A stretch of DNA of 64,000 nt, from the NCBI RefSeq assembly GCF_002113885.1, contig NW_018404492.1:6553255-6617254 (forward strand). The letters run 5' to 3'. Both the position numbers and the translations under genes were made by a program. This stretch comes from Mizuhopecten yessoensis (taxonomy: Eukaryota). Position 1 is the stretch's first letter. Each line of letters starts with the position of its first letter. Under the pieces are notes generated by a model, which was not told the DNA's origin, made no database searches, and saw only the letters and a list, made by a program, of their open reading frames with translations. This document shows, piece by piece, positions 6,618 through 51,507 of the stretch.

Positions 6618-7161
6618 ATGGAGTACAGAAGTGTTGTTTATAACGCCGCAAGAGACGGCAAGCTCAACAGACTTAAAATATTTCTCGACCACAAGTCGAA
6701 AGAAGAAGTGGCAAAACTTGTCCATGCTAAAACAAATGGGGCTACCCCTCTGATTATGGCCTGTAGAAACGGTCATCAAGATGTGGTGAAGTATCTCATC
6801 AATACGTGTAAGGTTGACAACGAACAGGTGGGCTCTGTAACGTTCGACGGCGAAACTATCGAGGGTGCGCCCCCTCTGTGGTGTGCTGCTGCGGCAGGAC
6901 ATCTTCAAATTGTGGAACATTTAGTGGAAAAAAATGCAGGAGTTAACAAAACAACATTTACAAACTCTACACCTCTCAGGGCTGCGTGTTTCGATGGCCA
7001 TTTTGAGATAGTGAAATTCCTTGTTGAGCATAAAGCCAACATCGAGATAGCTAACAGACATGGTCACACATGTTTGATGATTTCCTGTTATAAAGGACAC
7101 AAAGAAATTGCTCAGTATTTACTTGAATTGGGTGCTGATGTAAACAGAAAGAGTGTGAAAG
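6618..7161 (+). CDS. fem1c: Protein fem-1 homolog (FEM1A/C type), coding exon 1; ankyrin repeats
   Basis: VYNAARDGKL, GATPLIMACRNGH, FDGETIEGAPPLWCAAAAGH, NSTPLRAACFDGH and GHTCLMISCYKGH are FEM1A/C signatures. Donor AAG|GTATAA at 7162, phase 1. Confidence 0.95.
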
Positions 7162-7837
7162 GTATAATAGATTCTAACATTTTGATACTAACCGTCGTTT
7201 CATATAAGAAATAATTAGATTTACATAATAATTGCAGTCATTCAAAAAGGACTTTGTAATCGGTGGGGTAAACTATAAAAGAAAAGAGTAGAAATATGAA
7301 AAGGAATATTAAATTGGGTATTTTCAGACAAAAGGACCATGCTAGAAAGTTGTAGTATACTAAGGTATATAATTACATTGGTGTACAATCACACATTGAA
7401 AAGTATACTTCCATCTTGAGGTATATGTATATCATTGCTACTCCAACAGTGTTAGAGGTTTACACGGCGAGATACTTTTGACAGGCGCCGTGTTGTAGTT
7501 GACGAAATCAAGGATAGAAAAAAGTCGTCCAGTGGCCTCTTTATGTTATTAGAGTGATATTACTGCATGCAGATGTTGTTACTTTGGTGTCCGCACTTGG
7601 ACCTGGGTACCCTGTAAGTCAATGTCCTAATTAGCCTTCATCTCGCAAACATGTACTCTGGAAGACACAAAGTCATGTTTTTTCCATGCCGGGGAGGTAT
7701 GCCACAGTGGCGAACCACCTTATTGACTTGTTGGTAGTTGGAGGGAATTTGTTATCTTAATCAATCACTCGTTCAATTCAAATAGTTACAAATTTATAGA
7801 AACTGTCAACAGTGACAATTTCATTCAAGCAGTCTGC

Positions 7838-11850: not shown

Positions 11851-13036
11851 GTGATGTATTCATCAATGCCAAGTAAGACATTAGGAGAGGTGAAAAAGAT
11901 ATGAAATGTTGTAATGGGTCACAGTGCAGCAGTTTTATTTTGGTCACTTTCATTTGTGTCCCACAGCAAAAAAAAGGGTTTACCACAGTAGTCATCACCA
12001 CTTAATACTCTTAGGTAACTGCTAGCAGGTAAATTCCCTGCAGGGAATTGTATTTTACGGTAAAACTTAAAAGGCTGACCATAAAGAGTTTTTTTTTGTG
12101 TGATGGCTTACAGGTTAGATTATTTTACAAGAAGAGTCATGATGTATGGTGACTGACAATTGTACGTCATGTATACATTGTATTTTGGCACTTTGCCAAA
12201 TGTACCCATGTACTCCTGCAGAGTGATGAAAAGTGCCAACAGTAATAATATACTGCCTGTCGACTAACAAAAGGTTACCAGAAATATCAACTGATTGTAC
12301 ATGTAGTATTATGAATATATGTCCCAAACTCACACATCCCATGTCAGTCAGTACATTTATTTTAATGGGTTGTATTGGTGTTGGTATTACAAGGAACTGA
12401 TGAGCACCTGTGAACAGGTATACCTTTGAAAATCTATGTGTTTTTTTACTTTTCAATTGTACATGATGACGCTGATCTGACATGCATCAGCCACTAAATG
12501 TTCGCCAGAACATTATAACTCTTATGAAAATGAGGTGTTGCTGGCTCCAAGTTCAGCCAATATGGGCTACGATATATTTTTCATGTTTATTATGGTTATA
12601 GATAGTTATTCTTACTACTATACTCGTAATCCAACTGTGGAAGCTGTGAATCAGATGCTCAGATTCTGTTCCATTGGATAAACACTCTGGGCATATAATT
12701 ATATTTATAAATTCATATGTAATCCGTGATGTCGGATATATATTACCTCGGTGAATTAAATTTGCTCCTAAAGAGGATTATAGAAATTAGAAACGTGTAC
12801 AGAAATCTATATATCCAGATTTACAAACAATTATAGTAAGTAAGAACTCTCTATAACCTACAGCTACTTTTACCCAACTCTTAACTGATGTTATATTGTT
12901 GGGTCAACATGTAATCGTGCACATATGTATAAGAGCTGATTTACAAAAACCTAGGTACAGTATGTGAAATATCATGCATATATATCAATTTTGTGTATCA
13001 AGGAAATCATGTCTGATATTCTATTTATATTTGCAG

Positions 13037-28156: not shown

Positions 28157-28256
28157 ATGGATACGGAGCGGAGAAGACGTTTACAGACTGATGGTAGGCC
28201 GTCTCGTGTAGCCGCAGCCTTGGTGTTGGGGATCATACTTCTCCCTGTTATACACG
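28157..28256 (+). CDS. FN3/mucin type I membrane protein, exon 1 (signal peptide); whole model 7 exons, 2718 nt = 905 aa
   Basis: GACATGG start; MDTERRRR...VAAALVLGIILLPVIHG has basic n-region and hydrophobic h-region. Donor ACG|GTAAGT, phase 1. Confidence 0.7.
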
Positions 28257-30880: not shown

Positions 30881-31171
30881 GAGCCTGTTTAAGTTTAACC
30901 AGCACTAAAGCAGAACCCTTCAGAACATATGCAAAAATAACATGGAGTATAGCTGGTATAACGCCAGGATGCTCCGTTTTGAACTGGATGGTACACTATG
31001 ACTCGTCAAAACCAGTTCACATTTACCAGAACCGAAATAACACAGGCAGCTATGTGAATCAGTCCTTTGTTCGAGTTTACCCTAACTTCGAGTACAACGT
31101 GTTTGTGGAAGCATTCACCAACCAGGGCGTGGTGCGCTCGCCAATGTTTGTGTACAAGGCCCCGAAAACAA
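30881..31171 (+). CDS. FN3/mucin membrane protein, exon 2 (divergent FN3-like domain)
   Basis: Polypyrimidine plus GATAG acceptor; 291 nt phase 1-1 exon. AKITW ... VYPNFEYNVFVEAFTNQG matches the FN3 W and Y-corner pattern. Donor A|GTGAGT. Confidence 0.8.
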
Positions 31172-31487: not shown

Positions 31488-31602
31488 TTCCCGGGAGTGC
31501 TCCGGGTAAGTTACATATGTTGTCAGCCACGCATGACAGTGTCACCTTGGAGTGGGACGCGCTCAGCCTTTTCTACAAGAACGGGAACATCTTAGGTTAC
31601 AA
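31488..31602 (+). CDS. FN3/mucin membrane protein, exon 3 (FN3 N-half)
   Basis: Acceptor TTCCATAG; translates IPGSAPGKLHMLSATHDSVTLEWDALSLFYKNGNILGYK. Donor AA|GTAAGG, phase 2. Not in the ORF track. Confidence 0.88.
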
Positions 31603-31953: not shown

Positions 31954-32141
31954 ATTGACATACAGATTGCCGGGAAATAGCACAGTAATGTCTACCAGTG
32001 TGTCGGGAGAGAACACCCTGACCGGGGTCATTCGGGGTCTACAGCCCTCAACACACTACCAGATACAGGTGCAGTGTCTTAATGACGTTGGTTTGGGCCG
32101 TCCGAGCAGTCCCTGGCTTGATGTCACCACCAGTGCACTAC
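31954..32141 (+). CDS. FN3/mucin membrane protein, exon 4 (FN3 C-half)
   Basis: Acceptor TTCAG in matching phase; LTYR...IRGLQPSTHYQIQVQCLNDVGLGRPSSPW is canonical FN3. Donor C|GTAAGT. Confidence 0.9.
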
Positions 32142-32448: not shown

Positions 32449-32934
32449 CTACTACAACTTCCACTTCAACAACCATTACTACTACGACCACAACGACGAC
32501 CACCATCACCACTCCCACCACCGTCACCACTCCCACCACCGTCACCACTCCCACGACCACCGCCACCACTTCCTCCACCACCCCCACTACCACCACTGCA
32601 TACACTACTACTCCAACAACGACGACAGTTAAAAAGCAAACAATTACTTCGTTAACGACATCAACGCCTACCACAACAAAAACAACACCAAAACAGTTGC
32701 CAATCTCTGTTTCTATCACACCTGCTGCATCGAACCAGAAAACGTCAACACCAACGACTAAGTCAAACCAACCGTCTCCACCAGTCACAGTACACCTAAC
32801 AGCTTCCGGTGCAACATCAGCGCCAAAGTCCACTACCGGTAGATCCGTGACGTCACATGTAACAAAAAAGCTTCCTGCAAACCATTTGACCAACTTGATA
32901 CACACAACGACGCCATCAGCAACGACACGCAAAG
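32449..32934 (+). CDS. FN3/mucin membrane protein, exon 5 (Thr/Pro/Ser-rich mucin-like stalk)
   Basis: Acceptor TTTTAG; open ACN-codon frame PTTTSTSTTITTTT...; 486 nt phase 1-1, ending at GC donor AAG|GCAAGT. Confidence 0.82.
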
Positions 32935-33518: not shown

Positions 33519-33700
33519 ATCCGGGTGACGACAAGATCCTCGGCCTTGACCTATGGATGTTAGTGGCCATCGCTGCCGGCACCTTACTGTTATTATTGCT
33601 GCTTTCGGTGTTGCTTTGTTGCTGCTGTCGGTGCTGTTGCTTCGAGGAGGCAGCTGTTGGGGCTAAGACGAGGGGCGAGGAAAGAGTCTTTGACAAAAGG
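33519..33700 (+). CDS. FN3/mucin membrane protein, exon 6 (TM helix plus juxtamembrane Cys cluster)
   Basis: DPGDDKILGLDLWMLVAIAAGTLLLLLLLSVLLCCCCRCCCF; acceptor AACAG, donor AGG|GTATGA, phase 0. Confidence 0.88.
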
Positions 33701-34001: not shown

Positions 34002-35357
34002 AGAATGGACGGCGTCTTTATGGAAAAGGATGCAAGGAGAGACGATATGAGCAGGAAAACACGAACAAGGAGCGTGGTATCTATGGAATCTCTGGACGGA
34101 TACGGAGTTAATGAGGTCAAACCCCGGGCGATGCGACTGGTTAGTGTCGATAGTCACCATTCATTGGACGCAGTCCCGATACTAATACCATCTTCCGCGG
34201 GTAGATACTCTACTAGTCACAACACACCGATGGCCAAGTCCATGGGGACTCAGTATGAACGGATCCATACCACTCCTAGGGCTAGGGCTGCAGGAACCCA
34301 GTACGAGGACGTTACAGAGCGCGTCATATACCCCTCGCCGAAATCTAAGACGTTTGGTACACAGTATGAAAGTATCGCGGAGGAAATATCAACTAAAGAT
34401 GTTGGAACCGTTACAGACAGACGTGGCTCCTTAACATCTTGTGTGTCCCCATTTCCGCCAAACACATGGTTAGCAAAAACGCCGAGAACGCTCAGAGCAG
34501 TTGCACCGATGTATATTAATCCGGATTCGCTGAACCCTATAGTGATGACGACAATGAACGCATCCACTTCCGCTATGAGTAGTCCAGAGCGGAGGTTTAA
34601 ATCGGCAAACGTCCAGACGGATTTGAGTGTATTGAAACCACCAACCTCACTTCCGCAAAGTTATTCTTCTAAATCAGAATCTACCGGGTATCCGTCGTCA
34701 TTCATGTCTAAGAACGATGAAGCTGAAATAGAAATGTTACCTCCGGGTCCCTTAGATGACACAACTAAATCGGTAGGTGCCAGTAGTGTTAGCATTCCGT
34801 CAACAGCAATAGGCGACCGCAAGGTGCCGTTCAGTGATATCGCTAGTTGTCCCACGGCTGTTCCTCTCCGGCCGCAAGACATGCCAAGAACTCGAGATAC
34901 TTCTTTTCTACGGTATCCATCTAAGGCCGCCAGCCATCCCATCACACTCTGGGATATTCCCCTGAAGAGTTATCCAGACAGTATCACATATCCCAGCCAA
35001 GATAGCTCGGGTGAGGTCACTCCTACCCCTATTAATCGTATTGAGTATAACACGATATACGACAACCGTGTCAGCAACACAGATAATACCTACATCCACA
35101 ACTTTCTCGAGGATGCCAAGAGAATGGCGCGCAAACCTAAAGTCTCGCGACCGCCGAGACTTGCGGCGATACCGGCCAATGCTGAATCGCCGGTAGGTTT
35201 GTATGATCCGTTTCCGGAGGAGGGGGGTGCACATAACCTGATAAAACCTGGACTTAGTAAACAAACAACATTTAATAACATCCCAGCAGTGAAAGGTCCA
35301 GAGGTGCGAGCGATTTTATATGAACCACATCGTCTTAAGGATTCTACTGATTGTTGA
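34002..35357 (+). CDS. FN3/mucin membrane protein, exon 7 (451 aa disordered cytoplasmic tail)
   Basis: Acceptor TTTTAG at 34001 is in frame with the 450 aa ORF 34005-35357. Ser/Pro/Thr-rich; GC content above flanks. Confidence 0.88.
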   Translation, partial: RMDGVFMEKDARRDDMSRKTRTRSVVSMESLDGYGVNEVKPRAMRLVSVDSHHSLDAVPILIPSSAGRYSTSHNTPMAKSMGTQYERIHTTPRARAAGTQYEDVTERVIYPSPKSKTFGTQYESIAEEISTKDVGTVTDRRGSLTSCVSPFPPNTWLAKTPRTLRAVAPMYINPDSLNPIVMTTMNASTSAMSSPERRFKSANVQTDLSVLKPPTSLPQSYSSKSESTGYPSSFMSKNDEAEIEMLPPGPLDDTTKSVGASSVSIPSTAIGDRKVPFSDIASCPTAVPLRPQDMPRTRDTSFLRYPSKAASHPITLWDIPLKSYPDSITYPSQDSSGEVTPTPINRIEYNTIYDNRVSNTDNTYIHNFLEDAKRMARKPKVSRPPRLAAIPANAESPVGLYDPFPEEGGAHNLIKPGLSKQTTFNNIPAVKGPEVRAILYEPHRLKDSTDC

Positions 35358-41055: not shown

Positions 41056-41301
41056 ATGTTCGGATCCGTTCCCCTGTATTTCGTCATTGCAATAATAGCT
41101 GGGATAGGTGTTGTCGGCATCTTGGTAGGTTTCTGCTCATGTTGGATGTGTAAGCAGTGTTACTTGTGCTACGAAAAGAAGAACGAAGCTCGACAGCGAC
41201 GACGTAGAAAACGAAAACGTCGTCAACAACAACAGTATGATGAGTATGACGATGACGACGAGTATGATGAATTCGATGACAACATCTATTATTCCAAACA
41301 G
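41056..41301 (+). CDS. Uncharacterised single-pass membrane protein, TM exon; model 2 coding exons, 4380 nt = 1459 aa
   Basis: GCCATG start; MFGSVPLYFVIAIIAGIGVVGILVGF TM, then CSCWMCKQCYLC, polybasic RRRRKRKRR and an acidic Tyr run. Donor CAG|GTAGAT, phase 0. Confidence 0.8.
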
Positions 41302-41496
41302 GTAGATATGAGCTTCTTCTGTTCAAATATATCAAATGTCAACGTTAAATATTCATAGCAAAATATATATTTAGAAACAATTATTGTGCATTCTATTTCG
41401 GAGAAAATACAAAAAGCTTAATCCATGCCATTTTTTCTTATTTTGGGGAAAAGTTTTTCGGAGATACAATTTTGAAAACACTTCTTATGTTTTCAG

Positions 41497-46826: not shown

Positions 46827-47354
46827 ATGGCTGCCGTCATGACAAGACATGAAGTTGGCGTTTGTGATGTGGGATCCGCCGTGCGCGTGCCGAATAACGC
46901 GATAGCAAAGCTGATGTTTTATACGAAATGTATTTGCGACCTCATCAACCTGTATGATATGGACGAGATTTTCAAAAGACTGACTGATTTCGAGAGATAT
47001 TACCTTCTAACGGAGCTAGAAATAGATAAACTTATCATCTTCTGCATGAACTATTCACCGGAGGTTTTGGCGGACAAGTGTTTGTTTCACAACGAAGATA
47101 TTTGTGGCGATTCCATTAACAAGTTTATTGAATTGTCCTCGGTTGATCGACAGCTGATCGTGTCAGACGACATCATGCTTGGTGGAACGCAAACACGTGT
47201 CAAACGAATCATGTGTTACAAAATGGAATGGCTGATGGAGTACTATCTGGCACCGATGTTGGTAATGAAGAGAAGACACGATAAGATTATGAAAATCATT
47301 GCAATGCACAATAGGGAGGTGGCAAATGCTGACTGCTGCTGCATTATATTGTAA
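46827..47354 (+). CDS. Uncharacterised intronless 175 aa protein with C-terminal CaaX (CCCIIL), paralog A
   Basis: Intact ORF with AGGATGG start and TATAAA at 46701; ~72% identical to the 50968 ORF over the first 150 aa (hand count, 42 mismatches). Confidence 0.9.
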   Translation: MAAVMTRHEVGVCDVGSAVRVPNNAIAKLMFYTKCICDLINLYDMDEIFKRLTDFERYYLLTELEIDKLIIFCMNYSPEVLADKCLFHNEDICGDSINKFIELSSVDRQLIVSDDIMLGGTQTRVKRIMCYKMEWLMEYYLAPMLVMKRRHDKIMKIIAMHNREVANADCCCIIL

Positions 47355-50967: not shown

Positions 50968-51507
50968 ATGGCTGCCGTGATGACAAGGCGCGAAATGGGC
51001 GTTCGTGATGTGGGATGCTCCGTGAGCGTCCCGGAAGACGTCAAAGCAAAACTGATGTTCTACTTGAAATGTATTTGTGACCTCATCAGTCTCGATGACC
51101 GAGACGAGGATATGAAGAGACTGACAGATTTCGAGAGATATTACGTTCTAACGGAACCAGAAGTAGATCAGCTGACCGTCGTCTGCATTCTCATTTCACC
51201 AGACCTTTTGGCGGATAAATGTATATTTCACAGTGAGGATATGTGTGGTGATTCCAGGAACAAGTTTTTCGAATTGTCCTCAATTGATCAACAGCTGATC
51301 GTGTCAAACGACATTCTTATTGGCGGAATGCAAACACGTGTCAAAAGAATAATGTGTTATAAAATGGAATGGCTGATGGAATACTATCTGATACCAATAT
51401 TGGTACTGAAGAGAAGGCTCGAACTGAAAATGGCATTGGCACAAGAAATCGTGGCAATGCATGAAAGGGAGGAGGCAGATGCTGGATGCTGCTGCACTAT
51501 ATTGTAG
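50968..51507 (+). CDS. Uncharacterised intronless 179 aa protein with C-terminal CaaX (CCCTIL), paralog B
   Basis: Intact ORF with AAGATGG start and TATA-like TATATAG at 50864; shares AKLMFY.KCICDLI, RLTDFERYY and QTRVKRIMCYKMEWLMEYYL with paralog A. Confidence 0.9.
   Translation: MAAVMTRREMGVRDVGCSVSVPEDVKAKLMFYLKCICDLISLDDRDEDMKRLTDFERYYVLTEPEVDQLTVVCILISPDLLADKCIFHSEDMCGDSRNKFFELSSIDQQLIVSNDILIGGMQTRVKRIMCYKMEWLMEYYLIPILVLKRRLELKMALAQEIVAMHEREEADAGCCCTIL

What the first reader, a model, noticed from the sequence alone, without database searches (positions are those of the whole stretch)
34248..34376. Three tandem ITSM-consensus motifs overlapping LC8-type TQ motifs in an invertebrate FN3-mucin receptor
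Seen: GTQYERI (34248), GTQYEDV (34296) and GTQYESI (34359) all match TxYxx[V/I], followed by KDVGTVTD and KSANVQTD. Established: TxYxxV/I is the ITSM bound by SH2 proteins (SHP2, SAP family), while K/R-x-x-G-T-Q-T-like strings bind dynein light chain LC8, often multivalently in disordered regions. Inference: a tyrosine phospho-switch between LC8-driven dimerisation and SH2 recruitment. TQY is a non-canonical LC8 anchor.
Basis: partly seen in the sequence, partly recalled or inferred. Interest (0 to 1): 0.7.

Follow-up and report, generated by a model that had tools for sequence, protein, structure and literature searches.

The report
Conserved tyrosine motifs, scallop receptor tail
Three copies of the short motif GTQYExI/V really sit in the floppy intracellular tail of a scallop-specific membrane receptor and are kept by selection. 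They look like ordinary tyrosine docking sites, not a dynein-light-chain/SH2 switch.

Summary
GTQYERI, GTQYEDV and GTQYESI lie at exactly the stated coordinates, in the last exon (34002-35357, +) of a seven-exon, 905-codon gene. The gene encodes a signal peptide, two FN3-like domains, a Thr/Ser/Pro stalk, a TM helix with a Cys cluster, and a 451-residue disordered tail.

Three TQY never arose in 200,000 shuffles. The motif residues are invariant in four scallop-type sequences whose synonymous sites are near saturation (tail dN/dS about 0.1).

The family is tiny: five sequences, no Pfam family, single copy in this genome. In the one distant homologue only the third Tyr survives (TQYDPM). The first becomes Phe and the second is absent.

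The LC8/ITSM overlap is not supported:
- None of 79 validated LC8 binders has an aromatic residue at +1, a buried position.
- The conserved footprint runs from -3 to +3 around Tyr, not from -5 to +2 around Gln.

The separate downstream motifs KDVGTVTD and KSANVQTD are better LC8 candidates. They are kept in all five sequences, and the second has six copies in the distant homologue.

Most likely reading (about 0.4): phosphotyrosine docking sites for SH2 proteins. This is an inference from motifs only. Interest is modest.

The parts
28157..28256 (+). Exon 1: start codon and signal-peptide-like N-terminus (basic stretch, then a hydrophobic run), phase-1 donor CACG|gtaagt
   Evidence: The peptide is 51% identical to a collinear stretch in Ylistrum balloti (tblastn E 1e-8). 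Signal-peptide character is judged by eye only.
30881..31171 (+). Exon 2: first FN3-like domain
   Evidence: No Pfam hit. The ten nearest ESM Atlas clusters with a Pfam family are all fn3, score 0.94. 81% identical to Ylistrum. Splice phases fit.
31488..31602 (+). Exon 3: N-terminal half of the second FN3 domain
   Evidence: PF00041 E 0.0039, profile positions 1-33. Conserved in L002, L003 and L004.
31954..32141 (+). Exon 4: C-terminal half of the second FN3 domain
   Evidence: PF00041 E 1.4e-6, profile positions 29-80. The homologous exon in L002 scores E 2.9e-8.
32449..32934 (+). Exon 5: mucin-like stalk (161 residues, 65% Thr+Ser+Pro), ending in a GC donor AAAG|gcaagt
   Evidence: Pecten has a GC donor at the same site and Ylistrum a GT donor, with the same phase.
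33519..33700 (+). Exon 6: short juxtamembrane piece, TM helix, CCCCRCCC cluster (candidate palmitoylation), start of the tail
   Evidence: The acceptor ...caacag| is conserved in three scallops. The exon is 84-85% identical in Pecten and Ylistrum and 54% in L002.
34002..35357 (+). Exon 7: 451-residue disordered cytoplasmic tail plus stop codon
   Evidence: No Pfam family. AlphaFold2 mean pLDDT 38 with no secondary structure. dN/dS 0.09-0.14. Four RNA-seq reads in one of four libraries.
34248..34265 (+). Motif 1, (G)TQYERI; Tyr codon 34254-34256
   Evidence: Invariant in 4 scallop-type sequences with synonymous codon changes. It reads SRFENV in the distant homologue.
34296..34313 (+). Motif 2, (G)TQYEDV; Tyr codon 34302-34304
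   Evidence: Invariant in 4 sequences and absent (alignment gap) in the distant homologue.
34359..34376 (+). Motif 3, (G)TQYESI; Tyr codon 34365-34367
   Evidence: T, Q and Y are invariant in all five sequences. The +3 residue is I in four and M in the distant homologue.
34395..34418 (+). KDVGTVTD: LC8-like at every position except Gln0 (V/I here); followed by RRGS
   Evidence: [KR][DE][VIF]GT[VI]TD-x-RG is kept in all five sequences. It resembles the validated binders KDTGIQVD, KDLGIQVD, KDSYTLTE and DDKNTMTD.
34599..34622 (+). KSANVQTD: matches the validated LC8 anchor set (VQT plus D at +2, S at -4)
   Evidence: SAN-x-QTD is invariant in all five sequences. dN = 0 across the surrounding island among three scallops. 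The distant homologue has six SA[NKM]-x-QT copies. Compare RCVSVQTD and SAKATQTD.
35046..35099 (+). Deeply conserved Tyr island EYNTIYDNRVSNTDNTYIHN, including a Y-x-N site
   Evidence: Y348, Y352 and Y363 are invariant in all five sequences. The reading of Y-[DS]-N as a Grb2-type site rests on general knowledge.

Best explanation
The finding lies in the last exon of a lineage-restricted scallop gene for a type I membrane protein. The protein has a signal peptide, two FN3-like domains, a Thr/Ser/Pro stalk, a TM helix followed by a Cys cluster, and a 451-residue intrinsically disordered tail.

The three GTQYEx[IV] copies come from an internal triplication of a roughly 14-residue unit and are held by purifying selection. 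That much is shown.

Inferred: they are tyrosine-centred docking motifs that are phosphorylated and then read by SH2-domain proteins. pY-E-x-[IV] fits the Src-family type. T-x-pY-x-x-[VI] fits the SHP2/Csw type. The Tyr-Tyr spacings of 16 and 21 residues would allow a tandem-SH2 protein to bind two sites at once.

The LC8-type candidates are separate, older motifs further down the tail (KDVGTVTD and KSANVQTD). If LC8 pairs the tails at all, that happens beside the tyrosine motifs and does not compete for the same residues.
For: - Motifs are at the exact coordinates and are non-random: 0 of 200,000 shuffles give three TQY.
- G, T, Q, Y, E and the +3 I/V are invariant in all 12 instances (3 motifs x 4 species), although their codons differ synonymously.
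- Synonymous divergence is dS 0.87-0.95 among the three scallop genera and is saturated against the fourth sequence. Tail dN/dS is about 0.1.
- The conserved footprint reaches +3 on the C-terminal side, while -4 and -5 vary. That is the pattern expected of a Tyr-plus-3 reader.
- The tail is predicted to be disordered: pLDDT 38.
- TM exon and topology.
- Further Tyr sites invariant in all five sequences include Y-[DS]-N.
- The genome has at least 48 SH2 exon matches. One contig carries two SH2 exons upstream of PTP exons on the same strand, the SHP-type layout.
- SH2 specificities are taken from established knowledge, not from a test here.
Against: - There are no phosphorylation or binding data.
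- The invariance of G(-3) and Q(-1) is not explained by typical SH2 reading.
- In the only distant homologue the first Tyr is Phe, the second motif is missing, and the third has Met at +3. The triple motif is therefore a scallop-lineage feature.
- Tyr is not significantly more conserved than other residues: 12 of 17 against 231 of 433, p = 0.12.
- Only five sequences exist.
- Expression is barely detected: 4 reads in one of four RNA libraries, with no splice joints.
Confidence: 0.4

Rival explanations
1. Each GTQY is a non-canonical LC8 anchor overlapping an ITSM, so Tyr phosphorylation switches the tail from LC8-driven pairing to SH2 recruitment.
For: - G-T-Q-x-E matches the best LC8 binder VSRGTQTE at -2, -1, 0 and +2.
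- The region is disordered.
- Two further LC8-like motifs follow.
- The genome encodes many canonical LC8 copies; one is 81 of 84 residues identical to mammalian DYNLL2.
- The invariance of G, T and Q is otherwise unexplained.
Against: - Position +1 is fully buried and needs a mid-sized residue.
- Of the 79 validated binders, +1 is only T, V, C or I, never aromatic.
- LC8 positions -3 to -5 vary between species, while +3 relative to the Tyr (LC8 position +4, beyond the motif's last position +2) is invariant.
- The distant homologue, which is rich in x-QTD motifs, still keeps Y in TQYD. It has SRF in place of TQY in motif 1.
Confidence: 0.07
2. The motifs are YxxPhi sorting signals read by the mu subunits of clathrin adaptor complexes. 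They would control endocytosis or lysosomal delivery of the receptor, with no phosphorylation needed.
For: YERI, YEDV and YESI all fit Y-x-x-[LIVMF]. They sit in an accessible, disordered cytoplasmic tail. The rule itself is established knowledge.
Against: - The motif carries little information; five matches occur in the tail.
- It does not explain the invariance of G, T, Q and E.
- Tyr to Phe in the distant homologue is poorly tolerated by mu2 (general knowledge).
- Three copies 80-120 residues from the membrane are more than sorting usually needs.
Confidence: 0.15
3. The motifs are phosphorylation-independent aromatic docking sites, for example LIR-type [WFY]-x-x-[LIV] sites read by Atg8/GABARAP-family proteins. 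Tyr phosphorylation would then be inhibitory if it occurs at all.
For: The Y/F exchange with E at +1 and I/V at +3 retained in the distant homologue (FENV) fits an aromatic-x-x-aliphatic reader. A Thr upstream could be a tuning phosphosite (general knowledge of LIR motifs).
Against: This is another low-information motif. There are no acidic residues upstream. TQYDPM in the distant homologue has Pro at +2 and Met at +3, which do not fit. Nothing in the gene points to autophagy.
Confidence: 0.1
4. Motifs 1 and 2 together form an ITAM-like pair (YERI-x12-YEDV) for a Syk/Shark-type tandem-SH2 kinase, as in Drosophila Draper.
For: The 12-residue spacer is the same in all four scallop-type sequences. 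It lies at the upper limit of the ITAM rule (general knowledge).
Against: The second site ends in Val, not Leu or Ile. The spacer is at the extreme of the range. The pair is absent from the distant homologue. No Syk-type gene was sought here.
Confidence: 0.05
5. The repeats are a neutral leftover of an internal duplication and have no function.
For: The family is young and small. The distant homologue lacks two of the three motifs.
Against: There are 12 of 12 invariant motif instances across lineages with saturated synonymous divergence. dN/dS in the motif cluster is about 0.1.
Confidence: 0.03

Closest known systems
ITIM/ITSM-bearing single-pass receptors (PD-1, SLAM family, PECAM-1, SIRP-alpha; gp130 Y759), recalled from general knowledge and PMC6994217 / PMC8631942
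   Same: Type I membrane protein with Ig/FN3-type ectodomain. Several T/V-x-Y-x-x-V/I sites lie in a disordered tail, spaced so that a tandem-SH2 phosphatase could bridge two. A Q-Y-x-x-V core also occurs in PECAM-1 and gp130 (from memory).
   Different: There is no sequence homology and the family is restricted to bivalves. The tail is far longer (451 residues). G-T-Q-Y-E is invariant beyond the ITSM rule. SAP-family partners are not known outside vertebrates. No phosphorylation data exist.
Multivalent LC8 clients (ASCIZ/ATMIN, Nup159, RSP3, KANK1, GKAP); PMC6607443, PMC10046861
   Same: Disordered region with several short beta-strand-type motifs. KSANVQTD and KDVGTVTD resemble validated 8-mers. 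The distant homologue carries six SA[NKM]-x-QT copies at intervals of about 15-25 residues.
   Different: The scallop protein has only one motif with a validated anchor. The TQY copies break the anchor rule at +1. No single-pass receptor with an LC8 ladder is known to me. Binding is untested.
Transmembrane adaptor proteins (LAT, PAG/Cbp, NTAL), from general knowledge
   Same: A juxtamembrane Cys cluster follows the TM helix. The tail is long, disordered and rich in Tyr, with Y-x-N and Y-x-x-V/I sites. The NCBI models in Pecten and Ylistrum start inside the TM exon and so look like such adaptors.
   Different: Here conserved, phase-compatible upstream exons add a signal peptide, two FN3-like domains and a mucin stalk. 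There is no sequence similarity.
L1-family FIGQY ankyrin/doublecortin tyrosine switch, from memory and not tested
   Same: FN3-containing adhesion receptor in which a x-Q-Y tail motif is switched by Tyr phosphorylation. Motif 3 reads FGTQY.
   Different: Only one of the three copies has the Phe. The L1 architecture (6 Ig + FN3) and the rest of the L1 tail are absent. No homology was detected in any search.

Membership tests
ITSM (immunoreceptor tyrosine-based switch motif) | Sequence T-x-Y-x-x-[V/I] | tested here: met
   Three matches at 34248, 34296 and 34359.
ITSM (immunoreceptor tyrosine-based switch motif) | Located in the cytoplasmic tail of a membrane receptor | tested here: met
   The TM exon 33519-33700 lies upstream in the same open frame, and the ectodomain exons carry a signal peptide. 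Topology is inferred, not measured.
ITSM (immunoreceptor tyrosine-based switch motif) | Tyr and +3 V/I conserved in orthologues | tested here: inconclusive
   12 of 12 instances are conserved in four scallop-type sequences. In the distant homologue the three sites read SRFENV, absent, and TQYDPM.
ITSM (immunoreceptor tyrosine-based switch motif) | Tyr is phosphorylated and binds SAP-family or SHP-type SH2 domains | not testable with these tools
   Only presence of partners could be checked: at least 48 SH2 exon matches and one SH2-SH2-PTP locus on contig C4099. SAP-type genes were not sought.
LC8 (DYNLL) binding motif, applied to GTQYE | Anchor at -1/0/+1 drawn from the validated set ([TVIS]-Q-[TVCI]) | tested here: not met
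   Tyr sits at +1. None of the 79 validated binders has an aromatic residue there, and +1 is buried.
LC8 (DYNLL) binding motif, applied to GTQYE | Conservation footprint spans -5 to +2 around Gln | tested here: not met
   Positions -3 to -5 vary in motifs 1 and 2, while the residue at +3 relative to the Tyr (LC8 position +4, beyond the motif's end at +2) is invariant.
LC8 (DYNLL) binding motif, applied to GTQYE | Disordered context, with a strand breaker (D/E/P) at +2 | tested here: met
   pLDDT is 38. Glu is at +2 in all copies.
LC8 (DYNLL) binding motif, applied to KSANVQTD | Validated anchor, D/E/P at +2, H-bonding residue at -4, disordered context | tested here: met
   VQT, D and S are present. 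The motif is invariant in all five sequences. The -3 residue is Ala rather than the preferred basic residue. Actual binding was not tested.
LC8 (DYNLL) binding motif, applied to KDVGTVTD | Gln at position 0 | tested here: not met
   V or I in all five sequences. Table S4 lists only rare exceptions: TMT, TLT and TNT. The other seven positions match nNOS/DNMT3A-type binders.
YxxPhi adaptor-complex sorting signal | Y-x-x-[LIVMF] with a strictly required Tyr | tested here: inconclusive
   The pattern is met three times. Motif 1 has Phe in the distant homologue.
ITAM | Y-x-x-[L/I], then 6-12 residues, then Y-x-x-[L/I] | tested here: not met
   YERI-x12-YEDV: the spacer is at the limit and the second +3 residue is Val.

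The most novel reading that the evidence does not exclude
The whole tail is a client of LC8. GTQYE (three copies), GT[VI]TD and N-V-QTD are all diverged copies of one ancestral G-T-Q-T-[DE] unit and still engage LC8 dimers, zipping two receptor tails together. Phosphorylation of the Tyr at the buried +1 position expels LC8 and exposes SH2 sites. This would be the first tyrosine-gated LC8 ladder on a cell-surface receptor.
Probability: 0.06. Interest if true: 0.7.

Novelty: new member of a known kind. Interest (0 to 1): 0.3.

Why it matters
If the tyrosines are phosphorylated, this orphan protein would be a bivalve-specific surface receptor that signals through SH2 proteins. That gives a handle on lineage-specific adhesion or immune-type signalling in scallops.

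The more testable by-product is the set of deeply conserved LC8-like motifs, six copies in the distant homologue. They predict that a membrane receptor tail is paired by LC8, an arrangement not known to me for single-pass receptors.

None of this changes current understanding unless binding is shown. As it stands, this is a well-conserved but ordinary short-linear-motif prediction in an uncharacterised gene.

Tried and rejected
- **Homologue searches.** A word search with the tail found four proteins. One with the distant homologue found only itself. A profile search of 1.84 billion representatives gave only the two known representatives plus one spurious repeat protein, P0005. A metagenome contig scan found none. 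The own genome holds a single copy. Deeper orthologue alignment was therefore not possible.
- **Family and feature searches.** Pfam on the tail found nothing. The ESM Atlas gave no meaningful neighbour for the tail, best score 0.78.
- **RNA-seq.** Four libraries from four studies gave 4 reads in one library and no joints. The exon 5-6 junction and the expression level remain unconfirmed.
- **Literature.** A search for GTQYE/TQYEDV-type strings found nothing relevant.
- **LC8Pred-type scoring.** This was not run. The scoring matrices are not available here, and I did not retype the binder table into a script. The comparison with Table S4 is by inspection.
- **DNA-level tandem repeat.** Sought under the SA-N-x-QTD copies of the distant homologue and not found. 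These are old, diverged copies.
- **LC8-peptide complex prediction.** Not possible, because the fold tool takes single natural sequences only.
- **Joined seven-exon model.** Neither searched nor folded. It was only checked inside a script for an open frame. All searches were exon by exon.

Full report
**Observation**

The + strand of 34002-35357 is one long open frame preceded by a good acceptor (ttttag|AGA ATG GAC). Its translation has T-x-Y-x-x-[VI] at nt 34248-34265 (GTQYERI), 34296-34313 (GTQYEDV) and 34359-34376 (GTQYESI). KDVGTVTD is at 34395-34418 and KSANVQTD at 34599-34622.

In 200,000 composition-preserving shuffles of the tail, three or more ITSM matches arose 91 times and three TQY never. 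Each copy sits in a longer repeat, [ST]P-x-[AS]-[KR]-x-x-GTQYE-x-[IV]. The three are therefore an internal triplication and not three independent coincidences.

**The gene**

Seven exons on the + strand fit together with matching splice phases and give one open frame of 905 codons with no internal stop:
- Exon 1, 28157-28256: start codon and a signal-peptide-like N-terminus.
- Exon 2, 30881-31171: FN3-like. It has no Pfam hit, but its ten nearest ESM Atlas clusters with a Pfam family are all fn3.
- Exons 3 and 4, 31488-31602 and 31954-32141: the two halves of a PF00041 FN3 domain.
- Exon 5, 32449-32934: 161 residues, 65% Thr+Ser+Pro.
- Exon 6, 33519-33700: TM helix followed by CCCCRCCC.
- Exon 7, 34002-35357: the tail.

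Exon 5 ends in a GC donor (AAAG|gcaagt). Pecten maximus has GC at the homologous site. Ylistrum balloti has a canonical GT there with the same phase, which argues that this is a real donor. The exon 6 acceptor (...caacag|) is conserved in all three scallops.

The same exon order on one strand is found in Pecten (L003), Ylistrum (L004) and a distant homologue on a metagenome contig (L002). The NCBI models for Pecten (498 aa) and Ylistrum (496 aa) start at a Met inside the TM exon. In Pecten the FN3/mucin exons are called as a separate 203-aa gene. I read this as a split gene model, possibly caused by the GC donor. A short, ectodomain-less isoform cannot be excluded.

I did not search or fold the joined model. 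It was only checked for an open frame inside a script, and all searches were exon by exon.

Expression evidence is thin. Four reads fell on exon 7 in one of four RNA libraries, with no joints.

**The family**

The tail has no Pfam family and is single-copy in its genome. A word search found Pecten maximus LOC117335180 (80% identity), a Ylistrum balloti protein (78%), one transcript-like Logan contig (61%) and one distant protein (29%) on an ENA metagenome scaffold. A profile search of 1.84 billion representatives added nothing real. A second word search and a metagenome scan also added nothing.

The window genome is therefore a scallop. An assembly of 987.6 Mb in 82,659 contigs matches my memory of the Yesso scallop assembly, but I did not verify this.

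AlphaFold2 on the five-sequence alignment gives mean pLDDT 38 and no secondary structure apart from one short helix. This is consistent with intrinsic disorder, with the caveat that the alignment is shallow.

**Selection**

Among the three scallop genera dS is 0.87-0.95, and it is saturated against the fourth sequence. Tail dN/dS is 0.09-0.14. In the motif cluster it is about 0.1. In the island around KSANVQTD, dN is 0 among the three scallops.

In all 12 motif instances (3 motifs x 4 species) G, T, Q, Y, E and the +3 I/V are invariant, while their codons differ synonymously. The Gly codon, for example, reads GGG, GGA, GGC and GGA. The residues at -4 and -5 vary in motifs 1 and 2.

In the distant homologue the picture is weaker. 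Motif 1 reads SRFENV (Tyr to Phe, with T and Q lost). Motif 2 falls in a gap. Motif 3 reads TQYDPM. The homology of motif 3 is supported by its fixed distance to the invariant GT[VI]TD-x-RG.

Across all five sequences the invariant tyrosines are Y121 (motif 3), Y348, Y352, Y363, Y400 and Y439. Tyr as a class is not significantly better conserved than other residues (12 of 17 against 231 of 433, p = 0.12).

**Is TQY an LC8 anchor?**

The LC8 motif paper states that positions -1 and +1 are the only fully buried side chains. It reports a strong preference for mid-sized H-bonding or hydrophobic residues there, and that anchor deviations give non-binders (PMC6607443).

In its Table S4 of 79 validated binders, +1 is T, V, C or I only, and no aromatic residue occurs. 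Position -1 is T, V, I or S. Position 0 is Q, with rare N, M or L.

GTQ-x-E does match the optimal binder VSRGTQTE at -2, -1, 0 and +2. All three point to a tyrosine-centred reader. I put the overlap/switch model at about 0.07.

**The separate LC8-like motifs**

KSANVQTD has a validated anchor type (compare RCVSVQTD, RHQSVQTE and SAKATQTD), with D at +2 and S at -4.

KDVGTVTD matches KDTGIQVD, KDLGIQVD and KDSSTQTD at seven of eight positions but has V/I in place of Gln0. The only precedents for such an exception are TMT (myosin Va), TLT (MAG) and TNT (KIBRA).

Both motifs are kept in all five sequences. The distant homologue has six SA[NKM]-x-QT copies, four with validated anchors. There is no DNA-level tandem repeat beneath them, so they are old copies kept at the protein level.

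The genome encodes canonical LC8. One copy is 81 of 84 residues identical to mammalian DYNLL2. I estimate roughly 0.3-0.4 that at least KSANVQTD binds LC8. IQT- and TQT-anchored non-binders in the same table show that this cannot be assumed.

**Most likely mechanism**

I favour phosphotyrosine docking for SH2 proteins, at about 0.4. The grounds from established knowledge are:
- pY-E-x-[IV] resembles the Src-family SH2 optimum.
- T-x-pY-x-x-[VI] is the SHP2/SAP-type rule.
- Q-Y-x-x-V cores occur in SHP2-binding sites of PECAM-1 and gp130 (from memory).

The Tyr-Tyr spacings of 16 and 21 residues would allow a tandem-SH2 protein to bind two sites. The genome has many SH2 exons and one SH2-SH2-PTP locus. 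A Y-[DS]-N site invariant in all five sequences would fit a Grb2-type adaptor. All of this is inference from motif rules.

The rivals are:
- YxxPhi sorting signals (0.15).
- A phosphorylation-independent aromatic docking site such as an LIR (0.10); this rival is favoured by the Tyr/Phe exchange.
- An ITAM-like pair formed by motifs 1 and 2 (0.05); it fails the rule at the second +3.
- A neutral duplication remnant (0.03); it is disfavoured by the selection data.

**Verdict**

This is a new, uncharacterised member of a familiar kind, a single-pass receptor with tyrosine-based short linear motifs. It has a testable side prediction of LC8 binding to its tail. Interest is 0.3.

Noticed in passing
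window 32935 (exon 5 donor); L003 about 9315; L004 about 9178: GC-AG intron. The donor is AAAG|gcaagt in this genome and in Pecten maximus, and a canonical GT donor sits at the same site and phase in Ylistrum balloti. The NCBI models in Pecten split the gene here into 203-aa and 498-aa products.
   Followed up: partly
own genome G000: C5510 682-725 kb, C5434 1.52-1.54 Mb, C4518 548-564 kb (loci L006-L009, L012-L015): At least 13 intronless, full-length LC8 (PF01221) matches lie in tandem arrays. The C5510 copies examined are nearly identical to mammalian DYNLL2; the others examined are more diverged. One copy (L015) ends in a double stop codon that removes the final Gly. This is an unusual expansion of a normally low-copy hub gene.
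   Followed up: partly
window 41056-41358 and L002 4895-5167: The next gene downstream starts with an N-terminal TM helix, a CxCWMCKQC cluster and a polybasic run. It lies in the same position and orientation after the tail exon in the distant homologue's contig. The two genes are therefore old neighbours.
   Followed up: partly
L002 2603-4144 (protein P0004 residues 47-80): Where scallops have VSVDSHHSLDAVPILIPSS, the distant homologue has a run of more than 25 mostly Pro residues. This is a different kind of docking region (SH3/WW/EVH1-type) at the same place in the tail.
   Followed up: no
window 34419-34430 and 34587-34601: Basophilic kinase consensus sites flank both LC8-like motifs: RRGS directly after GTVTD, and RRFKS directly before ANVQTD. 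Both are conserved in the four scallop-type sequences. This suggests Ser phosphorylation could tune whatever binds there.
   Followed up: no
own genome G000: C4099 1,725,630-1,743,546 (- strand): Two SH2 exon matches lie upstream of PTP-domain exons on one strand within 18 kb. This is the layout of an SHP2/Csw-type phosphatase gene.
   Followed up: partly
window 6618-7214 and 12964-14361 (+): Large ORFs with ankyrin-repeat-like sequence lie upstream. By eye they look like a Fem-1-type gene. No family search was run on them.
   Followed up: no
window 46827-47354 and 50968-51507 (+): Two paralogous intronless ORFs of 175 and 179 aa end in CCC-x-IL.
   Followed up: no
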